Virus record (IMG/VR): IMGVR_UViG_3300042560_001323
Location: 62,001 to 126,000 of that record
DNA: 64,000 bases
Strand: one strand, 5' to 3'
Shown here: positions 984 through 55,172 of the stretch, piece after piece
Position numbering within the stretch: position 1 is the stretch's first letter
How the letters are laid out: every line of letters begins with the position of its first letter
Made by a program: the position numbers and the translations under genes
Notes under the pieces: generated by a model
Database searches by the model: none
What the model saw: the letters and a program-made list of their open reading frames with translations, nothing else
What the model was told of the DNA's origin: nothing

Positions 984-1044
984 TGTAAGCTCCTTACAAA
1001 TGGTTTATGTGTGGAGCGTCTATCGCTCCAGGATTATATAGTAG

Positions 1045-1192
1045 TAACAAAAACCAATAAAAGTTCAAAAACTCTATTGGTTTTCTAGACGCTTCATGGC
1101 AGATGCTAAGTGGTGATAATCACCGCTCAGTCTTAATTCCGCTCCACGTCCGTAATCTGCATACTCTGCAGATGAAAGTTCTTTATCGGTTA
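1045..1192 (-). ncRNA. Dispersed structured RNA cassette, copy 1 (most divergent)
   Basis: Shares core TACGGACGTGGAGCGGAATTAAGACT...TTAGCATCTGC..TGAAGCGTCT, a GAGTA-loop hairpin and a 3' hairpin with copies at 30.9, 31.5 and 50.6 kb, with compensatory changes. Confidence 0.8.
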
Positions 1193-1232
1193 GATTTCTC
1201 CAACCTTCTTTAAGAATGTGACAGATTCCGAA

Positions 1233-1292
1233 GTGGCACACAGAAAACAATCACATCGCAAATCCAATAGCTCGGGCTTCTTTCTTCTTGGT
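1233..1292 (-). repeat. 60-bp duplicate of the AAA ATPase 3' end and its downstream motif (2241-2300)
   Basis: 59/60 nt identical; encodes TKKKEARAIGFAM-stop out of context. Confidence 0.9.
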
Positions 1293-2225: not shown

Positions 2226-2247
2226 GTGCCACTTCAAGCGGTGGCAC
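2226..2247. promoter_or_regulatory. Dyad motif GTGCCA-N10-TGGCAC (member of a genome-wide operator-like family)
   Basis: Perfect palindrome; related dyads at 1218, 3417, 20205, 37897, 39131, 48345, 49691, 54720, 57296, 57612, 58565. Confidence 0.65.
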
Positions 2248-2258
2248 ACAGAAAACAA

Positions 2259-3371
2259 TCACATCGCAAATCCAATAGCGCGGGCTTCTTTCTTCTTGGT
2301 ATTTTTTTGAGAGTTGAAAATCTCAGCAATTGTGAAGTTTTTCTCAGGAAGTTCAACTTCTACGCCTTGCTTCTCCGCAACAGCAATTGCCTCATCTTTA
2401 GTAAGTTGACGGAACTGTAGAACATCAAAGCAACGACCTGGACGAATAAGGGCTTGGTCAACATCACTGAGACTGGCCAGGTTTGTCGTAAAGATAATCT
2501 TTTTATCAGACGATGAGATTAGACCATCACCAGCATTAAGAAACTTGTGAATAGTCCGGTTTCCGCTCTCACGGGAAGTCAAATATGCATCGGCGTCCTC
2601 AAAGATAAGATAGTTTACCGAAGAGTCATTAATGAAACTACTCAGGAAATTGTCGCTTTTAAGAATTGCATCATCATAGGAGAGTAGGGCATTCTTTTTT
2701 AAATGATGTAGTAGCCCACGAATGAACGTCGTTTTACCGGTTCCAGGTGGTCCCTGGAGCAAAAGAATAGAGGCAGAAGATGAGTTAAACCGTTCATAAT
2801 ATTCCTCAAGGCTTTCACCATTGAGGAAAGGATACATCTCAGTGAAAGGAGTATTCTTTATCTCCAGCTCTTTTGTAACTTTAACCATTTTATGATTGTC
2901 ATCCGTAAAACACCAGTTAATCATACATTTTTGTTCTTCGGTGTATTTTTCAAAATGTTCATATAGAACTGCGATAAATTTTTCAATTTCTTCTTTATCT
3001 CCACGCATCATTACATTAAAACTACGAGTATTAGATGTAATTGCGAAGTTTACAATAATATTATCAAAAATCAAACTATATGTATTAGTCGGACAAGTTG
3101 TGAATACTTGTGGTTTAGGATCGGGAAAAATTGTAATAAAATCTTCAAATTTTTCCCGAAATGCTTCATTAACCCCATTGTTTATCTGGCATTTCGGGGC
3201 CTCTAGATACACGTCTTCTGTGTGTAAATTTTTTCCTGCGTTAATATAATTAACAATAAATTGAGCATTGATGGCATTACGAAGCTCGTAACTACCAAAA
3301 GAATTATTATTTTGATGAAGAGTTGGGGCGGGAATGGTAAGACGGGTTTCGGTCATCTTGATTAATTTCAA
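2259..3371 (-). CDS. AAA+ ATPase
   Basis: Walker A GPPGTGKT, Walker B LIFED, SRH-like ALIRPGRCFD; paralog of 34057-35130. Confidence 0.9.
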   Translation of the reverse strand: MKLIKMTETRLTIPAPTLHQNNNSFGSYELRNAINAQFIVNYINAGKNLHTEDVYLEAPKCQINNGVNEAFREKFEDFITIFPDPKPQVFTTCPTNTYSLIFDNIIVNFAITSNTRSFNVMMRGDKEEIEKFIAVLYEHFEKYTEEQKCMINWCFTDDNHKMVKVTKELEIKNTPFTEMYPFLNGESLEEYYERFNSSSASILLLQGPPGTGKTTFIRGLLHHLKKNALLSYDDAILKSDNFLSSFINDSSVNYLIFEDADAYLTSRESGNRTIHKFLNAGDGLISSSDKKIIFTTNLASLSDVDQALIRPGRCFDVLQFRQLTKDEAIAVAEKQGVEVELPEKNFTIAEIFNSQKNTKKKEARAIGFAM

Positions 3372-19652: not shown

Positions 19653-20180
19653 TTAGGGGGTGCTAATAAATGTAATCTTTGGTCTTAGCGGTGGTTCTTC
19701 CTCAGTTTCTTCCTTAGTGAAGTCAAACAGAGGAACGAACAATAAAGTCTTACCATCGTCCAAAAGCGTGTGCATACTCATTAATTCCCAAGTGGCATCC
19801 CTGGCGGCATACCAGGCGGCATACCAGGCGGCATCCCTGGCGGAATACCCGGCGGCATCCCCAGCGGCATACCAGGCGGCAGACCCGGCGGCATCCCTGG
19901 CGGCAGACCTGGCGGCAGACCCGGCGGCATCCCTGGCGGCAGACCCGGCGGCATTCCTGGCGGCAGAGTCTAGGGCACGGTAGCGGCGGGCAACTTCATT
20001 CCATTGGTCGGCAGTAAGACCATCCATGAACCACCAGAAGTTAAGGACGGTTTCGTAGTTTGGTCCTAGAAAGTCTTGTGGACTTGTAAGAGCTTCAGGG
20101 TTTTGAAGTTCGTTGAAGAAGTTTTGATGGGCTTTTGAGTAATACATAAACTCCGTTGGATTTCTAAGAGAATAACCCAT
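19653..20180 (-). CDS. Ala-Ala-X-X repeat protein family, copy A
   Basis: [36 protein letters not shown]-domain, 14 tandem 12-bp units, ELMSMHTLL...LLFVPLF end. Confidence 0.8.
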
Positions 20181-25746: not shown

Positions 25747-26511
25747 CTATTTAACAAGTTTCCAACCTCTATAAGTTTTTCTTTTTCCATTAATTAACCT
25801 ACTAATTCCACTTGGTAATAAATCATGTTCATTCGCAAATACTGATAATTCTCCAACAACCACATAATAGTATATACCATCAGGGGATTCCAAGCAATAT
25901 TTTTTACCAAATCCAGGTCTATTCCAATCCCTCGTAGGCTTTTTATTTTTAATTTTACAGGAATTAGTTAAAGTCCACCCTTTATGTGTATATTGTTTAT
26001 AGCAACGAAGTGATATTAGTGCATTTAAACTTAAATTATGTTCTCTGGCGAAATTAGTAATATTTGTGCCAGAATAAACAATTCCTTCGGGGGAAGTAAA
26101 TGAAAATTCTTTAGTCTGTAATGGAGGCTTTATTCCAAGTTCTTTTTGTTTTAAGCTAAATTTCAGTCTTTGCTCTTTAGTGTGAGGGGGTCTAGTAACT
26201 CTACCTTTAAGCGATTTACTGATTTTTCTCCTACTTTCTTCAGTATGTCCAGTAAAAACGGGAGGAGCATCTCCACCATTTGATTTATTACAGAGAAATC
26301 CAGTTCCTAAATCTTTTCTGCCAAATACATTAATCATATAAATTTCATGTTTATATGCCTCCTCTTCCGTGAGATTATTTTTAAGAATGAGTATTCTATC
26401 TTTTGGAGGAATTGTAAAATAATCATGTTTTTGGTATGCCCGTCTACCTTTCCCCTTACCGATATACCAAGGAGTTCCATCTTCTCGTAAATATGCGTAA
26501 GTATAATACAC
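25747..26511 (-). CDS. Free-standing GIY-YIG homing endonuclease
   Basis: YTYAYLREDGTPWYIGKG..RR, E..MI...GRKD...G.L.N; NUMOD-like DNA-binding repeats; own CTAAATA promoter at about 26537. Confidence 0.88.
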   Translation of the reverse strand: MYYTYAYLREDGTPWYIGKGKGRRAYQKHDYFTIPPKDRILILKNNLTEEEAYKHEIYMINVFGRKDLGTGFLCNKSNGGDAPPVFTGHTEESRRKISKSLKGRVTRPPHTKEQRLKFSLKQKELGIKPPLQTKEFSFTSPEGIVYSGTNITNFAREHNLSLNALISLRCYKQYTHKGWTLTNSCKIKNKKPTRDWNRPGFGKKYCLESPDGIYYYVVVGELSVFANEHDLLPSGISRLINGKRKTYRGWKLVK

Positions 26512-26544: not shown

Positions 26545-28281
26545 TTAAGGGCTCAACCTTGCCTTACGGAATCTCTTCTCTTCATAATAAGCCCAAACAT
26601 TTGGAGCCCAGCGTTGTAGTTCTGGAACAATCGCATCACACAAAGCCTGAATCTCAAGTTGTGCATCAAGTTTGGCCCTTAAGTCTAGAAAATGTAGAAC
26701 CGAACGAAGATTAAATGAAACTACAAAATTTTGGCGAATAGCCTGAGCCAAAGAATCTCTAATATGTTCTTCAGACATTCCCCGTTCATACCTTGAGGCA
26801 TAACGCTTACACCCCTCAATGAAGTGCTCAAAATCTTCCTGGCGGTCTTCTTCTGTCCATTCGTACTTTTTACCTTTACGATTGGTATAGAAGCCAACAG
26901 GGCGAACGTAAAAAACATCTTCTACATCTAATTCACCGCTGGCAACTTTTAAAACCCGCTTCCCGGTGTAACGCTGCGACTGAACATCCCAAGTAGTTCC
27001 AATGCGATGGGTTCTACCCTGAACCATAACATTGTGGACGAATCCGGCACAAGAGAATGTAATCTGTGGATGCTCTAAACAGTTACCACATACTGCAACT
27101 TTATCATTACGACGAATAATAAGCGCACCAGTAGAAACCGTGGCACAATGAATTTCGCCTTCATAATCTACCCAGTTCTCGCTATAAGTTCTAGACCGGG
27201 TTGATTGTGAAATTTCAACTCTAGGATAGATTCTATCGGTGAGGCGTAAACAATAAAGGTCATTATGATTTTCGTTGTCTTTAATATCTTTACAGCAGGT
27301 AAACTTTAAATCGTTTATTGCGGCAATCGCTTGAAGTTGAGAGGCTAAACCATATGAGGTAGTTGAATATGCCCAAGTATTTCTACGATTCGTTCCATCC
27401 GAATTTCGCAAACCATCAAAAAGATTATAAACACAATCTTTTTCAAGTCGCAGATAACCATCGGGAAGTTTCTTAAAGTTTGAAGCGTAAAGGCAATTGG
27501 TTTTCATCCAATTTCCAATACCAGGATATGAAACAACATACCTATCATTTTTAGTTGAATAAAATTCTATCTCTAGTTCTTCACAGAGGGTTTGAAGATA
27601 TTCAATTTTCCTTTCTCGTTTTAAATGAAACCCTAGAGTGTTTGAACTAGTATGGGAATCCCCGTCTCCAACCCAAAATCCAATCAAGGCCCAAAAACTA
27701 GGATTATCAATTGGGGTATTTACAACGAGTCTTTCATTCTCCGAAAGATTTCCAGAAGTTGAATATCTAACGGGTTTATTATAAATTTCTTCCGCAGAAA
27801 TTGCATATCTTTCTGTCCAACTTCCATCTTTTTTTCTACTTTGAACAATCATTCTGTGGTCAGGACTAACTAAAAAGTCTAAAGCCTGACCCTCTAAATG
27901 ATACATTTTTCCTTTATAATCCCACCTTTGAACTGCGGTTGGCTTTTCAAAATTAACTAATCCAGTTTTTGTATCATAAGATGCTAATACTGTTTCTTTT
28001 GTTACGTCTGGCCAGAATATCCACCCATTTTCAGTTAAAACTTCCATATCAGATGAATAACAACCATAATGGCCACGGTCATTAGCAAGAAGTTGTTCAA
28101 CGATCCATTCACCACATTTCTGTGGAGTAGGAGTTTCAACTTGATGAATAGGAACTTCCGAGTAATCATTTTTACCCGCTTGCCATACAACCTGTTCTGG
28201 AATTGGATAGCATTGTAACATTACAACTTCTAATCTTGGATCTAGGAGTAGAAGGTCTTCCGCTTTAACTGGCCTGTTCAT
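26545..28281 (-). CDS. thyX: Flavin-dependent thymidylate synthase ThyX with an intein
   Basis: Exteins join as RGHYG-CLEH; Q.RTHR and NLRS.LHFLDLR...AQLEI ThyX motifs. Confidence 0.92.
   Translation of the reverse strand: MNRPVKAEDLLLLDPRLEVVMLQCYPIPEQVVWQAGKNDYSEVPIHQVETPTPQKCGEWIVEQLLANDRGHYGCYSSDMEVLTENGWIFWPDVTKETVLASYDTKTGLVNFEKPTAVQRWDYKGKMYHLEGQALDFLVSPDHRMIVQSRKKDGSWTERYAISAEEIYNKPVRYSTSGNLSENERLVVNTPIDNPSFWALIGFWVGDGDSHTSSNTLGFHLKRERKIEYLQTLCEELEIEFYSTKNDRYVVSYPGIGNWMKTNCLYASNFKKLPDGYLRLEKDCVYNLFDGLRNSDGTNRRNTWAYSTTSYGLASQLQAIAAINDLKFTCCKDIKDNENHNDLYCLRLTDRIYPRVEISQSTRSRTYSENWVDYEGEIHCATVSTGALIIRRNDKVAVCGNCLEHPQITFSCAGFVHNVMVQGRTHRIGTTWDVQSQRYTGKRVLKVASGELDVEDVFYVRPVGFYTNRKGKKYEWTEEDRQEDFEHFIEGCKRYASRYERGMSEEHIRDSLAQAIRQNFVVSFNLRSVLHFLDLRAKLDAQLEIQALCDAIVPELQRWAPNVWAYYEEKRFRKARLSP
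27082..28062 (-). mobile_element. Intein (327 aa) with LAGLIDADG homing endonuclease domain in ThyX
   Basis: Starts CYSSDMEVLTENGW, block B DHR, ends VAVCGN followed by Cys+1; ALIGFWVGDG and LFDGLRNSDG motifs. Confidence 0.92.
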
Positions 28282-30212: not shown

Positions 30213-30772
30213 ACTCTATTCCCCCATTGAATCTCGGGAAATGCTTCTTTAACAACATCAAAGGAAATGTTATACTTTTCTTGTAGCTTTTTATCTTTCA
30301 CAAAACAAATAATTTCAGCCTCACGAGGATGTAGACCTTGTAGCAGATTGATGAACATTGTTTCCCGGCGAATTCCAGAAAGGGAATCATTGCCACCACG
30401 GATAAAGTTAAAGAAATTAGTGTATTCCTTACGAATAGTTGTTCGGTTATTACTACCATAAGAATCTAACATCTCATCGGTTTTTAGTTGCTTATTCATA
30501 CTATCCGAAAAGGTTGTATCATTTCCAACAACGCCAATTTCTCTGGCATCGGCAAACGGTACATCACCCGGAGGAATTGCAGATTCTAAGCTTTGGTCAT
30601 AATTCCAAATGAATACTGCCATCATAGATGGGTCCTTATATTCTTGAAGAACTTCTACTTTTTTGGCATTGGAACGTTGTCTTTCAACCAAGTCAAAAAC
30701 TTCAAATAGAAATGGATTGGCTGGAAGTTTTTTAGGCGTAGTCACCTTCGTCGTCTTCGTCTGTGTCGTCAT
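30209..30772 (-). CDS. Conserved T4-like cyanophage protein
   Basis: LP.NPFLFEV...KKVEVLQ...RRETMFINLLQGLHP.EAEI. Confidence 0.85.
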   Translation of the reverse strand: MTTQTKTTKVTTPKKLPANPFLFEVFDLVERQRSNAKKVEVLQEYKDPSMMAVFIWNYDQSLESAIPPGDVPFADAREIGVVGNDTTFSDSMNKQLKTDEMLDSYGSNNRTTIRKEYTNFFNFIRGGNDSLSGIRRETMFINLLQGLHPREAEIICFVKDKKLQEKYNISFDVVKEAFPEIQWGNRV

Positions 30773-30825
30773 AATTTTGATCAAATGTTACTGCGTAAAG
30801 TATGTCTGGTTTGATAGGCCCGTCG
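30754..30825 (-). repeat. 72-bp duplicate of the 3' end of gene 31038-31259 (31057-31128)
   Basis: 66/72 identical; 5 of 6 differences are synonymous in the upstream gene's frame. Confidence 0.9.
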
Positions 30826-30831
30826 CTATTA

Positions 30832-30992
30832 TAGTAACAAAAACCAATAAGAGCCAAAAACTCTATTGATTTTATAGACGCTTCATAGCAGATGCTAAAT
30901 GGTAAATAACCTTTTTAGTCTTAATTCCGCTCCACGTCCGTAATCGGTGTACTCCACCGATACCCGAAAAGTATTAACTAGCCGAGCGTCTT
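30832..30992 (-). ncRNA. Dispersed structured RNA cassette, copy 2
   Basis: Core conserved with copies 1, 3 and 4; preceded by ATAAATA; ends in hairpin plus U tract. Confidence 0.85.
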
Positions 30993-30999
30993 TATTTAT
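30993..30999 (-). promoter_or_regulatory. T4-type late promoter ATAAATA
   Basis: Matches the TATAAATA-type late consensus directly 5' of RNA copy 2. Confidence 0.6.
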
Positions 31000-31037
31000 C
31001 TAACTTTTGTTTGTGGATAACTGAAAATACTCTATTC

Positions 31038-31259
31038 TCAGGCGTCCTTATAATCTTCTTCGTCTGTGTCGTCATAATTTTGGTCAAAAGTTACTGCATA
31101 AAGGATATCTGGTTTGATAGACCCGTCGTAGTTATACATCTCGGGGTGAAGTCTAGGAGCCGGGGGATAAAACTTGGATGCTATAAATCCAATAACACCA
31201 CCGAGCATTAAAAAGCAAAGAACTACTAGGACCGTTAGGGCAGTTATGAGGCCATACAT
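31038..31259 (-). CDS. Small membrane protein, conserved in cyanophages
   Basis: TM helix, then HPEMY..DG.I.PDIL.AV.F. Confidence 0.8.
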   Translation of the reverse strand: MYGLITALTVLVVLCFLMLGGVIGFIASKFYPPAPRLHPEMYNYDGSIKPDILYAVTFDQNYDDTDEEDYKDA

Positions 31260-31408
31260 TTTAGTTTTCTCCTGAATGTTTTTTTAGTTATTTTTAACTC
31301 AATCTTCAGGTGAATTTCTTTTGAGAAAAAGGAAACTACCTTAGCAATTCTAAAATTAAATAGTTCCTCCGTTTTTCTTTGCTTTTTATTGCGGAGCATA
31401 AACTCCAT
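31244..31408 (-). CDS. Hypothetical protein, duplicate of 31564-31749
   Basis: MEFMLRNKK...FNFRIAKVVSFFSKEIHLKIELKIT; the longer ORF-track start lies inside the RNA cassette. Confidence 0.6.
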   Translation of the reverse strand: MEFMLRNKKQRKTEELFNFRIAKVVSFFSKEIHLKIELKITKKTFRRKLKCMAS

Positions 31409-31413
31409 AGTAT

Positions 31414-31560
31414 GGAAAATCACTAAACTATAGTGATTTTCCAGACGCTTCACCGCAGATGCTAATTGGTATGAATAACCTATTAGTCTTAATTCCGCTC
31501 CACGTCTGTAATCGGTGTACTCCACCGATACCCGAAAAGCATTAACTAACCGAGCACAAT
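31414..31560 (-). ncRNA. Dispersed structured RNA cassette, copy 3
   Basis: Core conserved; 3' hairpin is a different but perfect 12-bp stem (GGAAAATCACTA/TAGTGATTTTCC). Confidence 0.85.
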
Positions 31561-31567
31561 TATTTAG
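31561..31567 (-). promoter_or_regulatory. T4-type late promoter CTAAATA
   Basis: Directly 5' of RNA copy 3. Confidence 0.6.
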
Positions 31568-31749
31568 GAAGGTCTTTCAGTTATTTTTAACTCAATTTTG
31601 AGATGAATTTCTTTTGAAAAAAAAGAAACTGCCTTAGAAATTCTAAAATTGAATAGTCCAGCCTTTTTTTCCTGTTTTTTAGAACGGAGCATATATTCAA
31701 TACCCCTATTTAGTTTTAACTTTGGCTCTCCTTCCTGGTCTTTTGTCAT
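31564..31749 (-). CDS. Conserved cyanophage hypothetical protein
   Basis: LNRGIEYMLR...FSKEIHLKIE. Confidence 0.7.
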   Translation of the reverse strand: MTKDQEGEPKLKLNRGIEYMLRSKKQEKKAGLFNFRISKAVSFFSKEIHLKIELKITERPS

Positions 31750-37907: not shown

Positions 37908-38765
37908 TCAGGTGGACTCCGATGTTAGTTTAAGTATTCTTAAAATATCTTTATGTGGAGATTTTCTTTTATTGCTTACGATATAATATAATGAATTTGG
38001 TTTATAGTTATTGTTCATTGCCCATTCAGATAAGCAAAAAATTATTTCACATCTACCGTCATTAAATTCAATTTTATAGTGTGATGAATTTGAATTTTTA
38101 TTTCCAGGTTTTGAATAATTACCAGTTAATGGTAATCTTCCAGGTTTCCATCCATTTGGGCATTCTGGGCAAAACTTTTGCTCACATTCATTATTCCACC
38201 ATTTATTTTTCTTTCTTTCATTAGTGAGCCTATCTACAATTTCTCTATCTATTTTATTTCCTTTTGAATAATTATTTCCCAATAAAGACTTACTAATTTT
38301 TCTTTTAGTTTCTTCGGTTAGAGGTTTACCTTTTTTTGCTTCACTCATTTTTCTTCTGGTTTCTTCTGATAGATTTTTACTCGCCTCACTCATTTTTCTT
38401 TTACTTTCTTCAGAATGTGATTTACCATAAAGAGGGTGATTTTTACCTTTACGACACTCACTCATTTTCCGTCTAGTTTCCATAGATAGATTTGCTGGAG
38501 CAACTCCACCATCACTTCTATTTCTCAATAAACCAGTACCTAAATCTTTTCTGCCGAAAACAGCAATCATATATCTTTCGTGATGGAGAGCTTCATCTTC
38601 TGTTAGATTTTGTTTTAGAAAGATTATTCTTAGTTTATCTTTAGGGGGGTTTACTTCATTTTTCCCTTTACGGTAAATTCTTCTTCCTTGTCCTTTCCCA
38701 ATATAATAAGGACTTCCATCTTCACGCAAATATGCGTAAGTATAAAACCTTTTTGGGTCTTTCAT
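37908..38765 (-). CDS. Free-standing GIY-YIG homing endonuclease with NUMOD3 repeats
   Basis: FYTYAYLREDGSPYYIGKG; SEE.RRKMSE repeats; start refined to MKDPKRF. Confidence 0.9.
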   Translation of the reverse strand: MKDPKRFYTYAYLREDGSPYYIGKGQGRRIYRKGKNEVNPPKDKLRIIFLKQNLTEDEALHHERYMIAVFGRKDLGTGLLRNRSDGGVAPANLSMETRRKMSECRKGKNHPLYGKSHSEESKRKMSEASKNLSEETRRKMSEAKKGKPLTEETKRKISKSLLGNNYSKGNKIDREIVDRLTNERKKNKWWNNECEQKFCPECPNGWKPGRLPLTGNYSKPGNKNSNSSHYKIEFNDGRCEIIFCLSEWAMNNNYKPNSLYYIVSNKRKSPHKDILRILKLTSEST

Positions 38766-38775
38766 CTGCTCTATA

Positions 38776-38859
38776 AATTGACTTGCAATGCTATTTATAT
38801 TTTTAAATTTTAAGGGGAAGTATGATAACTCCCCCAACCTGAAAAGATGCAAGTCAATT
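38776..38859 (-). promoter_or_regulatory. Leader hairpin (12-bp inverted repeat) enclosing a TATAAATA late promoter upstream of the endonuclease
   Basis: AATTGACTTGCA (38776-87) / TGCAAGTCAATT (38848-59); TATAAATA at 38792-38799. Confidence 0.65.
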
Positions 38860-38890
38860 ACAGGCATTAGTATTTATACCGCTAAAAAAT

Positions 38891-46721: not shown

Positions 46722-47137
46722 ATATTGTCAAACAATGAAACGAAAATCAGTCGTTTGCCCTGCTCCAGTAAGATGTGCATACCGATTAATTCTTGAGTTG
46801 CCCAGGTGACTGCCCTAGCCTCATCTAAGTCTTCAGTCCCATAATCATCGGCGTAATGTGACCAGATAGAATGCCAAGTGGCCTGCAGGGCTGCGTGTGC
46901 GGCTTTTGGATTTACGAAATGAGCAGCATCTTCTACATTACCAACAGAATTGTATTTAATTATGTAATCATATCGCTTGGCAACTTCTCTAAATTGAACT
47001 GTAGTAAGTGTATCAATCCATAACCAAAAATTTATGACCGCCGCACAATTCGGACCCAAAAAGTCTTCGGGGCGCTCCAAGGATTCAGAGGCTTCTGAGT
47101 ATTTGCTAAACCGTTGGTGAATTTTAGAGTAGGTCAT
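46718..47137 (-). CDS. Divergent member of the AAXX-repeat family lacking the regular repeats
   Basis: SKIHQRF...P.DFLGPN..AV.NFWLW.D.L and TQELIGMHILL..GK.L.FV.LF. Confidence 0.75.
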   Translation of the reverse strand: MTYSKIHQRFSKYSEASESLERPEDFLGPNCAAVINFWLWIDTLTTVQFREVAKRYDYIIKYNSVGNVEDAAHFVNPKAAHAALQATWHSIWSHYADDYGTEDLDEARAVTWATQELIGMHILLEQGKRLIFVSLFDNI

Positions 47138-47592
47138 AAGTCGTTAAAAAAAGGAACGAACAATAAAGTCTTACCATCGTCCAAAAGCGTGTGCATACCA
47201 ATTAGTTCATAGGTGGCATTCCTGGCGGCATACCCGGCGGCAAAATAGGCGGCAGACCCGGCGGCATCCCTGGCGGCAGACCAGGCGGCATCCCCGGCGG
47301 CATACCCGGCGGCAAAATAGGCGGCAGACCCGGCGGCATCCCTGGCGGCAGACCAGGCGGCATCCCCGGCGGCATACCCGGCGGCATACCTGGCGGCATC
47401 CCAGGCGGCATCGTCTAGGGCATCATAACGGCGGGCAACTTCATACCATTGGTTCTCGGTAAGACCGTCCATAAACCACCAGAAGTTAAGGACGGTTTCG
47501 TAGTTTGGTCCTAGAAAATTCTGTGGATTTTTTAGGGCTTCAGGGTTTTGAAGGCGGTTGGAGAAGTTTTGGTGGGCTTTTGAGTAATTCAT
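47134..47592 (-). CDS. Ala-Ala-X-X repeat protein family, copy B
   Basis: Same N- and C-domains as copy A; 16 tandem 12-bp units including a 6-unit higher-order duplication. Confidence 0.8.
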
Positions 47593-48255: not shown

Positions 48256-48366
48256 ATGTGGCTTGTGTTAATCATTAGTAAAGGACTGGTGAGATTTTTC
48301 TCGGTTTTATTATAGGGTATAATGCCCGGTTTGTCGAGCAACAGTGGACGGTTGTGATGGTGTCCA

Positions 48367-48437
48367 TAGGAACATCGGGGATTGAACCCAAATCAACCGG
48401 TTATAGGCCGGTCGCTCTTCCATTGAGCTATGCTCCC
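48367..48437 (-). tRNA. trnI: tRNA-Ile, anticodon UAU
   Basis: Cloverleaf GGGAGCA/TGTTCCT; anticodon arm ACCGG-CCTATAA-CCGGT; T loop TTCAATC; no encoded CCA. Confidence 0.85.
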
Positions 48438-48592
48438 ATCAAAATCAACAACCGTCGTTATGCTCTCCAAGATAGTTAAAATCGGCACTATCTTCTTTTT
48501 TCTGATGGTCAGTATACATCTGAAAACTTAATAATATTCCCCTTAAATGGGAACAATCATCCATTTCATTTCAATGTTTTCAGTCATTTTTA

Positions 48593-48939: not shown

Positions 48940-49212
48940 TCATTGAGTTAATTTATCTTCATATTCTTGAAAAATATTCATTTCCCAATAATCAAACTCT
49001 TCTTGAATTTTACGTTTTGCATCTTTGTATGATTTTTCGGTAAGACACCCCGGATTTTGATAAAGAATTTTCATTTGTTCAAGGGCATTTTGTAAGCCTT
49101 GGATATATTCAAAACTATATTTGCGGGCATTATATTGCTCTAAGGTCTCGGTTACTCCATCTGGGTAATAAAACTTTTCTGTTTGAGAATTAAATGTAAT
49201 TTGATTAGTCAT
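48940..49212 (-). CDS. Hypothetical protein
   Basis: 90 aa ORF; ATGA-coupled to copy C. Confidence 0.65.
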   Translation of the reverse strand: MTNQITFNSQTEKFYYPDGVTETLEQYNARKYSFEYIQGLQNALEQMKILYQNPGCLTEKSYKDAKRKIQEEFDYWEMNIFQEYEDKLTQ

Positions 49213-49631
49213 AAGTCGTTAAAAAGAGGAACGAACAACAAAGTCTTACCAGCATTCAATAAAGTGTGCATACCAATTAGTTCATAAGTTGCATACCCGG
49301 CGGCATACCCGGCGGCATACCCGGCGGCATCCCAGGCGGCATACGCGGCGGCATCCCAGGCGGCATCCCAGGCGGCATTCCTGGCGGCATCCCAGGCGGC
49401 ATCCCTGGCGGCATTCCTGGCGGCATACCTGGCGGCATACCAGGCGGCAGAGTCTAGGGCACGGTAGCGGCGGGCAACTTCATTCCATTGGTCGGCAGTA
49501 AGACCATCCATAAACCACCAGAAGTTAAGGACGGTTTCGTAGTTTGGTCCTAGAAAGTTTTGTGGACTTGTAAGAGCTTCAGGGTTTTGAAGTTCGTTGG
49601 AGAAGTTTTGGTGTGTTTTGGAAATTGGCAT
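49209..49631 (-). CDS. Ala-Ala-X-X repeat protein family, copy C
   Basis: Near-identical flanks to copies A and B; 13 tandem 12-bp units. Confidence 0.8.
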
Positions 49632-50032: not shown

Positions 50033-50476
50033 TTACTGTAGGTAAGACCTCAACTTATAAACATTCTTACCGTGGGATTCCATCAAATCCTGCACAAGAT
50101 TTGCAGTTGCATAACTTCTTTGTTTTTCCGCTTCTTCGGAAATGTCTGTGAGCATTTCAATAAGACGTTCATTATCTGCACGCAGTTGTTCTACCATACC
50201 TCTTGCATCAATCTCTTGATTGGCATTGGCTGGCCCTTCAATAGCAGAAACCTCAACAATCCGCTCAAGTCTTGAGACTGGGCGAATGTTGAGGTAGCGC
50301 ATATGCTCACTGAGCCTATCAATCTCATCAAACATTTCGGTATATTGGTCGCCAAAAAGTTCGTGTAACTGAGGAAAATCCGTTCCAACGACATTATGAT
50401 GGTAGTTCCAGGTTTTCTGGAATAGAACAAACAATGTGGCCTGGGTGTCACTCAATAGTTTAAATAATTTTTCCAT
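50033..50476 (-). CDS. dps: Dps / ferritin-like DNA protection protein
   Basis: KTWNYHHNVVG.DFPQLHELF..QY.EM..E.D..SEHMR; HGK..YKLRS. Confidence 0.92.
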   Translation of the reverse strand: MEKLFKLLSDTQATLFVLFQKTWNYHHNVVGTDFPQLHELFGDQYTEMFDEIDRLSEHMRYLNIRPVSRLERIVEVSAIEGPANANQEIDARGMVEQLRADNERLIEMLTDISEEAEKQRSYATANLVQDLMESHGKNVYKLRSYLQ

Positions 50477-50491
50477 TATAGTCTTTTTGAA

Positions 50492-50653
50492 TAGTAACAA
50501 AAACCAATAAGAGTCAAAAACTCTATTGATTTTCTAGACGCTTCATAGCAGATGCTAAATGGTTTAAATAACCTTTTAGTCTTAATTCCACTCCACGTCT
50601 GTAATCGGTGTACTCCACCAATACCCGAAAAGCATTAACTAACCGGGCACAAT
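50492..50653 (-). ncRNA. Dispersed structured RNA cassette, copy 4
   Basis: Core conserved with copies 1-3; C-G to U-G compatible changes; CTAAATA at 50654-50660 directly upstream. Confidence 0.85.
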
Positions 50654-50663
50654 TATTTAGGTC

Positions 50664-53682: not shown

Positions 53683-53749
53683 TATTTATTATTAAGACTT
53701 TCATCACAAAACAGGCAAAACTATGTGAAAGAATTTGGCTAAAAGCCAA

Positions 53750-53822
53750 CGGCCAATAGGAGATTTGAACTCCTGTAACCTACTAGACATGTAGGTGTCC
53801 TAGACCACTAGACGAATTGGCC
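53750..53822 (-). tRNA. trnD: tRNA-Asp, anticodon GUC
   Basis: GGCCAAT/ATTGGCC acceptor; anticodon arm CCTAC-ATGTCTA-GTAGG; T loop TTCAAAT. Confidence 0.88.
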
Positions 53823-53825
53823 ATA

Positions 53826-54311: not shown

Positions 54312-54594
54312 CACCCCGTGAGGGCTACGATCCCCCGATCTACTGCTTAGCGTACCACTATGGTTTTCACCACCACCACATTTAGTGTTTGTGGTCTGGA
54401 CCATCCCTTCACCATATTTCTTAAGAACTTAGGTGCTTCCCGTCTGGTCTCTACACGTTCAAGATTTCTCTTGCTTCGCTCGGGATTGCCATTTTAAAGG
54501 TTTCCCCGAATTTGAGAAGTTACATTCATAGAGTTTCCCCTATGGCGCTCCATCAGTTTAAGGCAGTTGCTTTATCCGGCTAAGCTAACGGGGC
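54312..54594 (-). tRNA. trnR: tRNA-Arg(UCU) interrupted by a group I intron
   Basis: Exons 54594-54560 and 54350-54312 splice to ACTGC-CTTCTAA-GCAGT; acceptor GCCCCGT/ACGGGGT. Confidence 0.88.
54351..54559 (-). mobile_element. Group I intron, 209 nt, no ORF
   Basis: Follows a U, ends in G; core P AAATTCGGGGAAA, Q AATCCCGAGC, R GTAGAGACCA, S AAGGGATGGTCC (P7 GACCA/TGGTC). Confidence 0.88.
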
Positions 54595-54731: not shown

Positions 54732-55172
54732 TTACTGGCTAATTTCTTCAAGATGTGGCGGAACAAAAGAAGCCCGAATACCCATAACGCCACCTAATTT
54801 CCTTTGAGCCTCGCTATTATCGGGTCTGAACTCATAATACACAGCATTCTCAATAAGAACCCGCTCGGGTCTATACCGATACTCATCAAGTATCTGCTGG
54901 TTCTTCATTTTAGGTTTATACATTCTCTTTTCTTCCCGTTCATACTGCTCTATCGCAGAATCAACATCGTATTTTACTCTGCTGTCTAATAATTCAGGGG
55001 TTTTAATAATGTATTCATTTAACTCTTTCGGAGAGTATTTAGTGTTTCTTTGAATCTGGTCATTAAGAACCCAAACTTTCTCTTCAGATAAACCGGTGCA
55101 ACGGGAAATACAGAAAACAATCGTTGTTATTGTCAGAGATATAACTGTCCATCTAATAGCTTCTTTTTTCAC
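54732..55172 (-). CDS. Hypothetical membrane-anchored protein
   Basis: N-terminal TM helix; C-terminal I.NAVYYE....KLGG..GIR. Confidence 0.7.
   Translation of the reverse strand: MKKEAIRWTVISLTITTIVFCISRCTGLSEEKVWVLNDQIQRNTKYSPKELNEYIIKTPELLDSRVKYDVDSAIEQYEREEKRMYKPKMKNQQILDEYRYRPERVLIENAVYYEFRPDNSEAQRKLGGVMGIRASFVPPHLEEISQ

What the first reader, a model, noticed from the sequence alone, without database searches (positions are those of the whole stretch)
1045..1192. Four dispersed copies of a covarying structured-RNA cassette (1045-1192, 30832-30992, 31414-31560, 50492-50653)
Seen: on the minus strand each copy has (i) a 7-bp hairpin with an invariant GAGUA loop whose stem covaries (AUCGGUG/CACCGAU versus AUCUGCA/UGCAGAU), (ii) a long stem RGACG/CGUCU - internal loop - GCGGA/UCUGC - loop AUUAAGA/CA - CUNNN/NNNAG (GAG/CUU, AAA/UUU, AAU/AUU covariation) with a variable tip, and (iii) a 3' hairpin, with a U tract in three copies. 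Three copies start right after a (C/A)TAAATA late promoter. Single-stranded motifs (UGGA, AUUAAGA, UGAAG) are conserved while stems vary, the signature of a functional RNA. I cannot match it to a ribozyme or riboswitch consensus from memory. Inference: a late-expressed small RNA or attenuator; the GAGUA loop fits the GNRNA pentaloop type seen in lambda boxB, and a 5' loop could pair with AUUAAGACUAA as an alternative fold.
Basis: partly seen in the sequence, partly recalled or inferred. Interest (0 to 1): 0.85.

Follow-up and report, generated by a model that had tools for sequence, protein, structure and literature searches.

The report
Orphan TnpB guide-RNA modules in phage
The four repeated RNA cassettes are real, but they are the guide-RNA scaffold (omega RNA) and right end of a TnpB insertion sequence that has colonised this T4-like phage; in this window they survive as protein-less copies, three of them right behind late promoters.

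Summary
A covariance model finds exactly four copies on the minus strand (132-154 bits; next hit 18 bits). The fold is supported by compensatory changes.

The interpretation needs replacing. In related viral contigs, and elsewhere in the same 243-kb phage contig, the cassette is the last ~100 nt of a 398-aa tnpB gene plus ~35 nt up to the transposon right end. That is where a TnpB omega RNA (guide-RNA scaffold) lies. The topology matches the solved ISDra2 omega RNA: four stems plus a pseudoknot. The "GAGUA pentaloop" pairs with UACU at positions -6 to -3 before the guide, and this pairing covaries in distant relatives.

The window has no tnpB. The same genome has four intact copies outside it.
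- c2, c3 and c4 (with L005 in another phage) are one miniature element, a ~30-nt left end fused to the omega core.
- c1 is a 5'-truncated tnpB.

An empty-site comparison places c4 exactly between a late promoter core TAAATA(A/G) and the 5'UTR of a Dps-like gene.

Most likely function, inferred only: late-transcribed orphan guide RNAs used in trans by the phage's TnpB for homing or retention. This is a new member of a known kind, with no Rfam family.

The parts
1041..1175 (-). c1: omega-RNA scaffold core (hairpin 1 to right-end terminus ...UUACUAC)
   Evidence: CM R1 153.8 bits. Aligns to the 3' end of tnpB in L001, L002 and L011.
1176..1220 (-). c1: remnant of the tnpB 3' coding region, which is also the 5' part of the omega RNA. 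Together with the coding part of the core (down to the TAG at 1074-1076) it makes up the last 49 codons, ILKEGW...KRLENQ*. The gene body is missing.
   Evidence: tblastn of L002 TnpB residues 351-399 against 1220-1074, 84% identity. Frame analysis.
1025..1040 (-). c1: predicted guide segment (16 nt just 3' of the right end)
   Evidence: Similarity among all copies stops at ...TTACTA(Y). Guide position is by analogy with ISDra2. Inferred.
30992..30999 (-). c2: ATAAATAA, a late-promoter-type motif and putative transposon-adjacent motif (TAM) abutting the left end
30964..30991 (-). c2: left-end remnant (~28 nt) forming a small covarying hairpin, fused to the omega core
   Evidence: Homology to the left end upstream of tnpB in L002 and L001. 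Same junction in c3, c4 and L005.
30831..30963 (-). c2: omega-RNA scaffold core. The former tnpB frame is broken here by a 1-nt deletion.
   Evidence: CM 142.2 bits. Frame analysis.
30815..30830 (-). c2: predicted guide. It lies in a 3' remnant of the small membrane-protein gene X.
31560..31567 (-). c3: CTAAATAA motif abutting the left end. It overlaps the stop codon of small ORF Y1.
31532..31559 (-). c3: left-end remnant
31407..31531 (-). c3: omega-RNA scaffold core with a shortened stem 4 and compensatory changes relative to c4
   Evidence: CM 132.2 bits. Compensated pairs.
31391..31406 (-). c3: predicted guide, covering the ribosome-binding site and start of small ORF Y2
50653..50660 (-). 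c4: CTAAATAA, the resident late promoter of the Dps-like gene and putative TAM
   Evidence: Empty-site relatives L153-L158 have TAAATA(G/A) directly followed by the sequence that follows the right end in the window.
50625..50652 (-). c4: left-end remnant
50491..50624 (-). c4: omega-RNA scaffold core
   Evidence: CM 153.9 bits
50475..50490 (-). c4: predicted guide, the 5'UTR of the Dps-like gene 50033-50500(-)

Best explanation
Each cassette is the omega-RNA (right-end guide-RNA) scaffold of an IS200/IS605-type, tnpB-only insertion sequence that has multiplied in this ~243-kb T4-like phage.

In a complete element the order is: late-promoter-like TAAATA(A/G), a ~115-nt structured left end, tnpB (398 aa), then the right end. 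The omega scaffold overlaps the last ~33 codons of tnpB and ends at ...UUACUAU. The next ~16 nt of flanking DNA are read as the guide.

The window holds only derivatives without a protein gene. c2, c3 and c4 are one miniature (PATE/MITE-like) element in which ~30 nt of left end are fused to the omega core. c1 is a tnpB that lost all but its last 49 codons.

Shown:
- homology to tnpB 3' ends
- the RNA fold and pseudoknot, with covariation
- the shared deletion junction at four sites
- intact tnpB copies in the same genome
- the position of c4 between a late promoter and a 5'UTR

Inferred:
- The mini-elements are transcribed late from the TAAATA motif they abut.
- The RNAs are bound in trans by TnpB made from the four intact copies elsewhere in the genome.
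- They guide cleavage of genomes that have TAAATA(A/G) plus the guide sequence uninterrupted, that is, co-infecting relatives or sister genomes lacking the insertion. Recombinational repair then copies the module in, giving RNA-guided homing or retention.
For: (1) In L001, L002/L010, L006, L011, L015, L021, L044 and others, the same sequence is the 3' end of a 398-aa ORF ending ...CPSCGSxHDRDLNASINILKEGW...KRLENQ*.

(2) That ORF is TnpB. Pfam gives HTH_OrfB_IS605, OrfB_IS605 and Cas12f1-like_TNB. NCBIfam guided_TnpB scores 337 bits against a cut-off of 100. The PDB ISDra2 TnpB (8bf8/8exa) matches at E = 3.7e-75.

(3) Model R1 hits the 3' end of every close tnpB. It also hits TnpBs only 53-54% identical (L024-L026, 58-60 bits), and weakly the same position in L027-L031.

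(4) Similarity among all copies ends abruptly at TTACTA(T), as a transposon end should.

(5) The topology equals that of the ISDra2 omega RNA: stem 1 whose loop forms a pseudoknot with nucleotides just 5' of the guide, stem 2 enclosing stem 3, then stem 4. Here the pseudoknot pairs AGUA with UACU at -6..-3, with compensatory variants AGUU/AACU and AAUC/GAUU. The pseudoknot was not part of the model used to make the alignment.

(6) Four tnpB copies in the same contig are uninterrupted and keep the RuvC D/E/D residues. None lies in the window.

(7) c2, c3, c4 and L005 share one left-end-to-omega junction at four different loci. Among themselves they keep the fold through 3 compensated pairs. L057 is an independent orphan in which CATAAATAG is fused to the core.

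(8) Empty sites upstream of the Dps-like gene in L153-L158 read TAAATA(G/A) followed by the 5'UTR. In the window the element sits exactly between the two.

(9) Protein-less PATE elements that encode omega RNAs used in trans are described in PMC10055086.
Against: - There are no expression or binding data. Trans-loading by TnpB is inferred only.
- The mini-elements lack the main left-end hairpin, so mobilisation by a TnpA is uncertain. No TnpA was looked for beyond noting that there is no room for one inside the element.
- The TAM rests on one empty-site comparison plus the invariant TAAATA next to every left end. The boundary is uncertain by 1-2 nt.
- For c2 and c3, the one empty relative (L163) has no TAAATA directly before the guide-matching sequence. 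There is a 6-nt offset for c3, and the c2 match lies inside gene X. Those two guides may therefore have no canonical target.
- c1 has no promoter of its own.
- The A/U-rich stem 4 ending in a U run might stop some transcripts before the guide, although it is not scored as a terminator.
- L018 has a loop change (GAUUA) that is not compensated in the pseudoknot.
Confidence: 0.88

Rival explanations
1. The cassettes are inert relics. They are decaying right ends of TnpB elements, still similar only because the events are recent, with no present role for the RNA.
For: c1 is plainly a truncated gene. c2's former reading frame is broken. The guides of c2 and c3 have no TAM-adjacent match in the empty relative L163. 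Copies are 80-92% identical, so divergence is modest.
Against: Among the orphans alone, substitutions in stems are compensated (3 pairs) or wobble-compatible, with almost no disruptions. The same mini-element junction occurs at four loci in at least two phages, so it spread after losing tnpB. An independent orphan, L057, again keeps promoter plus core. All invariant single-stranded motifs are retained.
Confidence: 0.25
2. The cassettes act in cis on neighbouring genes. They would be structured leaders, insulators or terminators between late genes. Alternatively they are guide-less decoys that titrate TnpB.
For: c3, c4, L005 and L057 sit between a late-promoter motif and the ribosome-binding site of the next gene, so they are part of that gene's late 5'UTR. 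Stem 4 ends in a U run.
Against: The same RNA is embedded in the tnpB coding end in complete elements, where no downstream gene is served. Stem 4 fails the terminator scan and is deleted in L006, L013 and L014 without loss of the rest. Covariation extends to a pseudoknot involving the last nucleotides before the flank, which is a guide-RNA feature.
Confidence: 0.12
3. The conservation reflects single-stranded DNA structure at the transposon right end recognised by a Y1 transposase (TnpA), not an RNA.
For: IS200/IS605 ends carry subterminal hairpins used by TnpA (PMC10055086). The elements here have defined ends.
Against: TnpA sites are short subterminal hairpins, not a 130-nt four-stem fold with a pseudoknot. 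The stems contain many G-U pairs, some of them invariant. The complementary strand folds 7-15 kcal/mol worse. No tnpA lies within the elements. The left end of the mini-elements has lost its main hairpin.
Confidence: 0.05
4. The cassettes encode a small protein, the conserved C-terminal ~45 residues of TnpB, expressed on its own.
For: c1 (58 codons from a TTG), c4 and L005 keep the frame open up to the TAG.
Against: c2 is frameshifted and c3 has lost the stop. c2-c4 have no plausible start codon and follow in-frame stops. Substitutions hit first and second codon positions (SAEYAD / SAEYVD / SVEYTD) while preserving base pairs. In ISDra2 the equivalent C-terminal tail is disordered and poorly conserved. 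Pfam finds nothing in the c1 peptide.
Confidence: 0.02

Closest known systems
ISDra2 TnpB omega RNA (reRNA) of Deinococcus radiodurans, IS200/IS605 family (PMC10097598)
   Same: Overlaps the 3' end of tnpB and runs to the right end, with the guide taken from the flank. Has four stems plus a pseudoknot between the stem-1 loop and nucleotides about -6 to -3 before the guide. The cognate protein is a clear homologue (E = 3.7e-75).
   Different: No detectable sequence match and no Rfam family. The putative TAM is TAAATA(A/G) instead of TTGAT. The carrier is a T4-like phage rather than a bacterial chromosome. Half of the copies seen in this genome have no tnpB.
PATE-like protein-less IS200/IS605 derivatives of Geobacillus stearothermophilus that encode omega RNAs (Meers et al., PMC10055086)
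   Same: Miniature left-end/right-end elements without genes. They keep the omega RNA and would need TnpB from another copy in trans. They coexist with many tnpB-only elements.
   Different: Here the left end is reduced to ~30 nt and its main hairpin is lost. The elements sit in a virus, next to late promoters. Mobilisation by TnpA is unproven.
Free-standing homing endonuclease genes (Seg/Mob, GIY-YIG/HNH) and PeSL promoter-stem-loop cassettes of T4-like phages (PMC4122927)
   Same: Selfish modules that sit between genes in variable regions of T4-like genomes. They are expressed from phage promoters and spread in co-infection by cleavage and recombination. A GIY-YIG gene in this window even carries a copy of the tnpB left-end leader.
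   Different: Target recognition here would be by RNA guide plus TAM, not by protein. The orphan modules carry no nuclease gene at all.
TldR, nuclease-dead TnpB-like RNA-guided repressors (PMC10705468)
   Same: Omega-like RNAs used away from transposition, and guides that lie over promoter-proximal DNA.
   Different: All four TnpB copies here keep the RuvC D/E/D triad. The guides are simply the flank of each insertion.
Lambda boxB / GNRNA pentaloop hairpins
   Same: A short hairpin whose 5-nt loop GAGUA fits the GNRNA pattern.
   Different: The loop covaries with the 3' tail as a pseudoknot and is GAGUU.. or GAAUC in relatives. There is no nut-site context.

Membership tests
TnpB omega RNA (reRNA) of IS200/IS605-type elements | Encoded at and overlapping the 3' end of a tnpB gene, on the same strand | tested here: met
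   In more than 15 loci the cassette is the last ~100 nt of a 398-aa TnpB ORF. The window copies are derivatives of these.
TnpB omega RNA (reRNA) of IS200/IS605-type elements | Scaffold ends at the transposon right-end boundary, and the guide is the adjacent flank | tested here: met
   Conservation stops at TTACTA(T) in all copies, and the flanks are unrelated. The guide role of the flank is inferred.
TnpB omega RNA (reRNA) of IS200/IS605-type elements | Conserved multi-stem fold with a pseudoknot next to the guide | tested here: met
   43 pairs, 98.6% paired, 25 pairs with changes on both sides. In the pseudoknot, 2 of 4 pairs are compensated in L024 and L025. Topology as described for ISDra2.
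TnpB omega RNA (reRNA) of IS200/IS605-type elements | A cognate, catalytically intact TnpB is available | tested here: met
   Four uninterrupted copies in the same contig with GIDLG, xLE(D/N)LN and DRDLNAS. None is inside the window.
TnpB omega RNA (reRNA) of IS200/IS605-type elements | The RNA is expressed, bound by TnpB, and directs TAM-dependent DNA cleavage | not testable with these tools
   Needs RNA-seq or RIP and an interference assay.
PATE/MITE-like non-autonomous IS200/IS605 derivative | Left-end and right-end sequences of a known element with no coding capacity between them | tested here: met
   c2, c3, c4 and L005 have ~30 nt homologous to the left end, fused to the omega core and right end.
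PATE/MITE-like non-autonomous IS200/IS605 derivative | The same derivative is present at several independent sites (it spread after the deletion) | tested here: met
   An identical junction at four loci in at least two phage contigs.
PATE/MITE-like non-autonomous IS200/IS605 derivative | Precise insertion next to the family's target motif, shown by an empty site | tested here: inconclusive
   c4 fits: TAAATA(R), then the element, then the 5'UTR. c2 and c3 do not fit the single empty relative L163, and both are flanked by diverged duplicates of the neighbouring genes.
PATE/MITE-like non-autonomous IS200/IS605 derivative | Mobilised by a TnpA transposase in trans | not tested
   No TnpA search was made. 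The elements have no room for one.
Lambda-type boxB / N-utilisation hairpin | A GNRNA pentaloop kept as such and recognised by an antiterminator protein | tested here: not met
   The loop changes in step with the 3' tail (GAGUA, GAGUU, GAAUC), so it is a pairing strand. No antiterminator protein was searched for.
Intrinsic terminator / attenuator | A G+C-rich hairpin immediately followed by a U tract | tested here: not met
   The terminator scan finds none at any copy. The U run is part of the stem's 3' arm.
Any Rfam 15 family | A match at the gathering score, or at least E < 0.01 | tested here: not met
   No hit on the cassettes at the gathering score. Nothing on the cassettes at E <= 10 in 30700-31700 or in the full element of L002.

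The most novel reading that the evidence does not exclude
The phage runs a multi-guide, RNA-guided homing system. One nuclease family (four tnpB copies) is served by its own omega RNAs and also by stand-alone, late-promoter-driven guide modules that have spread as miniature elements. The nuclease's TAM would be the T4-type late promoter core TAAATA(A/G). Insertions would then capture late transcription automatically, and every guide would point at the promoter-proximal DNA of a rival phage's late gene. That would make these orphan omega RNAs functional weapons or drive elements in phage-phage competition, and a natural step from single-guide transposon RNAs towards dispersed guide sets.
Probability: 0.3. 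Interest if true: 0.75.

Novelty: new member of a known kind. Interest (0 to 1): 0.45.

Why it matters
It replaces an apparent 'new riboregulator' with a precise identity: TnpB guide-RNA scaffolds.

It also documents a T4-like phage heavily colonised by an RNA-guided nuclease element. At least four intact tnpB genes, one partial copy and four protein-less guide modules lie in one genome.

Three points could interest people who work on OMEGA/TnpB systems and phage homing:
- Orphan guide modules keep their fold by compensatory change.
- They sit directly behind late promoters.
- The putative target-adjacent motif coincides with the late-promoter core.

If TnpB uses these RNAs in trans, this is RNA-guided homing in lytic phages, parallel to the protein-guided Seg/Mob endonucleases. 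The family is absent from Rfam, and the alignment and model made here could seed one.

Tried and rejected
- Rfam at gathering score on the whole window, and at E <= 10 on 30700-31700 and on the full element in L002. Only tRNAs and a group I intron elsewhere; nothing on the cassettes.
- blastn of c4 against 50,697 GenBank phage records: no match.
- A looser 16-mer scan of IMG/VR returned more than 117 loci. Almost all were chance matches; the model kept only a handful.
- An 18-mer scan of 185,579 bacterial and archaeal genomes gave 5 chance matches and no model hit, so no host copy was found.
- Relatives of the AAA ATPase next to c1 were sought to find an empty or full site for c1. Only the window's own contig came back, so the origin of c1 and of the 60-nt, 98% repeat remains open.
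- Terminator and sigma-70 scans gave no terminator at the cassettes. One sigma-70-like match at the c2 right-end junction is probably chance.
- The protein-coding reading was rejected (frames broken, no starts).
- The boxB reading was rejected (loop covaries as a pseudoknot).
- The idea that the repeats flanking c2 and c3 are target-site duplications was rejected. They are diverged copies of neighbouring genes (Y1/Y2, X/X'), 82-88% identical.
- Literature searches for phage-encoded TnpB, or for TnpB in T4-like phages, found nothing specific.

Full report
**The observation.** The four cassettes exist where stated, all on the minus strand. MAFFT aligns them at 75% mean column identity. The repeat finder groups them as one four-member family (D3). 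Six pairs are kept through changes on both sides. Covariance model R1, built later from 18 homologues and run over the whole window with filters off, finds exactly these four at 132-154 bits. The next best hit scores 18.5 bits. Each copy folds well below shuffled controls (z = -4.3 to -6.2) and 7-15 kcal/mol better than its complement, so the signal is strand-specific. Rfam has nothing on the cassettes, either at gathering score or at E <= 10. GenBank phages have no similar DNA.

**What it is.** An exact-pattern scan of IMG/VR with the most conserved 22-mer found the window's own contig (IMGVR_UViG_3300042560_001323, 243 kb) and five other viral contigs. Translating upstream of the cassette in its conserved frame was decisive. 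In L001, L002 and L006 the cassette is the end of a ~400-residue open frame finishing ...REWTCPSCGSxHDRDLNASINILKEGW...AEYVDYGRGAELRLNG..HHLASAMKRLENQ*.

That ORF is a TnpB:
- Pfam gives HTH_OrfB_IS605, OrfB_IS605 and Cas12f1-like_TNB.
- NCBIfam guided_TnpB scores 337 bits against a cut-off of 100.
- IS200_TnpB scores 409 bits.
- The solved ISDra2 TnpB (8bf8, 8exa, 8h1j) matches at E = 3.7e-75.

A TnpB's guide RNA (omega RNA, or reRNA) is encoded at the 3' end of tnpB and runs to the transposon right end. A search with the TnpB protein brought 32 viral loci. Model R1 hits the 3' end of tnpB in every close relative. It also hits TnpBs only 53-54% identical (L024-L026, 58-60 bits), and weakly the same position in a further group (L027-L031). 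In all copies similarity stops abruptly at ...TTACTA(T), after which the flanks are unrelated. That is how a transposon right end followed by a site-specific guide should look.

**The fold.**
- On 18 sequences, 39 nested pairs are 98.7% paired, 8 pairs change on both sides, and 0 of 500 shuffles reach any observed measure. Slid controls drop to 36-52% paired.
- The cryo-EM description of the ISDra2 omega RNA gives a 116-nt scaffold of four stems plus a pseudoknot. In it, nucleotides -5 to -3, just before the guide, pair with the loop of stem 1 (PMC10097598).
- The phage RNA has the same order of parts. Hairpin 1 comes first, then an outer stem enclosing two inner stems, then a 3' hairpin, then an 8-nt tail GUUACUAU.
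- The invariant loop GAGUA of hairpin 1 is complementary to UACU at -6 to -3 of the tail. In L024 the two strands read AGUU and AACU. In L025 they read AAUC and GAUU. In L027 and its relatives they read AGUUG and CAACU.
- Counted on an alignment fitted to a model that did not contain this pseudoknot, the four pseudoknot pairs are 98.8% paired, and two of them have compensatory changes. Overall there are 43 pairs, 98.6% paired, 25 of them with changes on both sides. One sequence (L018, loop GAUUA) is an uncompensated exception.
The 'conserved single-stranded motifs' are the junction nucleotides of a guide-RNA scaffold.

The window corresponds to about 62-126 kb of the contig. tblastn finds no tnpB body in it, only the C-terminal 15-49 residues at the four cassettes. 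The same contig has full tnpB genes at about 23, 31, 190 and 220 kb and a partial one at about 14 kb. All four full copies are uninterrupted and keep the RuvC residues D (GIDLG), E (LE[D/N]LN) and D (DRDLNAS).

**Anatomy of the window copies.**
- c1 (1041-1220) is a tnpB that has lost everything but its last 49 codons. It follows a 60-nt, 98% repeat of the end of an AAA ATPase gene (1233-1292 and 2241-2300). It has no promoter motif.
- c2, c3 and c4 begin with ~30 nt that are not tnpB. They are homologous to the left end that precedes tnpB in complete elements. This is fused to the omega core at hairpin 1.
- The same junction occurs in L005, a different phage contig at a different locus. A scan for the junction sequence finds only these sites plus the orthologue of c2. 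One deletion derivative has therefore reached four loci, as a MITE- or PATE-like element would.
- Among these four, three stem pairs differ by compensatory double changes and the rest by wobble-compatible changes. This argues that the fold was still under selection after tnpB was lost.
- L057 is an independent orphan in which CATAAATAG is followed after two bases by hairpin 1.
- The former tnpB frame is irrelevant in the orphans. It is broken in c2, runs on without its stop in c3, and is preceded by stops without starts in all three. Substitutions such as SAEYAD, SAEYVD and SVEYTD change amino acids while keeping base pairs.

**Where they sit.**
- Every left end, complete or miniature, is abutted by (C/A)TAAATA(A/G).
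- In the window this motif lies mostly on the coding strand (CTAAATAA: 9 of 10) and typically 15-40 nt before start codons. This fits a T4-type late promoter, though it was not verified as one.
- For c4, six relatives of the downstream Dps-like gene lack the element. Their upstream regions read ...TAAATA(G/A)TC(T)AAAAAGA...ATGG. In the window, CTAAATAA is followed by the element, and the right end TTACTAT is followed by TCAAAAAGACTATAATGG. The element therefore lies exactly between the promoter core and the 5'UTR.
- I infer that TAAATA(A/G) is the transposon-adjacent motif, and that the right end TTACTAT is its imperfect internal counterpart. The boundary is uncertain by one or two bases.
- One empty site (L153) even has AAAAACTTTCCATAAATAG. 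This resembles the left flanks of many complete elements, which suggests an extended promoter context is the preferred target rather than part of the element.

**What does not fit neatly.**
- L163, a 91% relative, has neither c2 nor c3, and it has single copies of the small genes Y and X.
- In the window, c3 lies between a diverged Y1 (82% identical) and the orthologous Y2. c2 lies between a complete, foreign-looking X and the 3' remnant of the resident X (88% identical).
- Both right junctions are exactly at the right-end terminus. In L163, however, the matching sequence is not directly preceded by TAAATA.
- These are not target-site duplications. Unequal recombination between element copies in different co-infecting genomes would produce such arrangements, but I could not test that.

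**Mechanism.** The identity is well supported: an omega-RNA scaffold plus right end of a tnpB-only IS200/IS605-type element, with the window copies being protein-less derivatives. Function is inferred in four steps:
1. Transcription of c2-c4 starts at the late promoter they abut.
2. The transcript reads through stem 4, which is not scored as a terminator, into ~16 nt of flank.
3. TnpB from the four intact copies loads the RNA in trans. All invariant scaffold positions are retained in the orphans.
4. The complex cleaves DNA that carries TAAATA(R) directly followed by the guide sequence, that is, genomes lacking the insertion. Recombinational repair then copies the module in.

This is the retention and homing role shown for bacterial TnpB. 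The same work notes PATEs that encode omega RNAs needing TnpB in trans (PMC10055086). The main rival is that the copies are young relics. Cis-regulatory, DNA-structure and peptide readings fit the data less well (see rivals).

**Comparison and novelty.**
- The closest known things are the ISDra2 omega RNA (same place, same topology, homologous protein) and Geobacillus PATEs (same kind of orphan).
- The differences are the viral carrier, the putative TAM equal to the late-promoter core, the much-reduced left end, and the absence of any Rfam family.
- Literature searches found no description of TnpB guide modules in T4-like phages. No copy of this RNA was found in bacterial genomes.
- I rate it a new member of a known kind, of moderate interest. 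It would be of higher interest if trans-guided homing at late promoters is shown.

Noticed in passing
window 38763-38880 (-), with ORF 37908-38867 (-): A sequence 71% identical to the whole left-end leader of the tnpB element: TATAAATA, 5' arm, hairpin, TATAAATAG, 3' arm, AGAGCAGATG. Here it precedes a GIY-YIG/NUMOD-type homing endonuclease ORF instead of tnpB. The long-range arms covary (ATTGACTTGCA/TGCAAGTCAAT here, TTGGTTCGCA/TGCGAACCAA in L010). This suggests a shared late-expression leader that brackets an internal late promoter, as in T4 late translational control. No right end or omega RNA follows it.
   Followed up: partly
window 30751-31702 (-); L163:1550-2012: Compared with the 91% relative L163, which has one Y, one X and no element, the window has Y1-c3-Y2-X-c2-X'. 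Diverged (82-88%) duplicates of the neighbouring small genes flank each mini-element. The right junctions are exactly at the transposon end but not next to a TAAATA in L163.
   Followed up: partly
window 1233-1292 and 2241-2300 (-): A 60-nt, 98% identical direct repeat: the last 14 codons, the stop and 15 nt of the AAA ATPase gene 2259-3371. It brackets ~1 kb with three small ORFs (1934-2194, 1626-1985, 1342-1641). The second copy abuts the truncated tnpB of c1, in frame through a TGA.
   Followed up: partly
window 54376-54570 (-): Group I intron match (Rfam RF00028, 55.2 bits, gathering score 50). It lies between ORF 54732-55172 and tRNA-Asp, with no obvious split protein gene around it.
   Followed up: no
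window 25747-26511 (-) and 26545-28281 (-): A second GIY-YIG homing endonuclease ORF, paralogous to 37908-38867 (repeats D6 and D10). It lies directly downstream of a 578-aa ORF whose middle looks like an inserted intein or homing-endonuclease-like segment. Neither ORF was searched against a protein family library.
   Followed up: no
window 19807-20106, 47252-47551, 49291-49590: Three copies (86-91%) of a 300-nt segment made of 12-nt repeats (GGCGGCATxCCx). They lie in ORFs 19653-20180, 47134-47592 and 49209-49631 on the minus strand, and presumably encode Gly/Pro/Met-rich repeat proteins.
   Followed up: no
window 48366-48438 and 53749-53823 (-): Two phage tRNA genes, tRNA-Ile (anticodon TAT) and tRNA-Asp (GTC).
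   Followed up: no
L006, L013, L014, L020 (IMG/VR contigs 3300034356_001222, 3300042522_000272, 3300042905_003351): Complete tnpB elements whose omega RNA lacks stem 4 entirely (...AATCAATAGAGTTTTTTACTAT) but keeps the pseudoknot tail. This is a natural counterpart of engineered scaffold trimming.
   Followed up: no
L048:6011-6137 and L048:2930-3053(-); L018:170-296: A second, divergent TnpB/omega family (28.8-33.3 bits with R1) in a related 127-kb phage contig, next to the main family. One copy follows a truncated tnpB of 171 codons.
   Followed up: no
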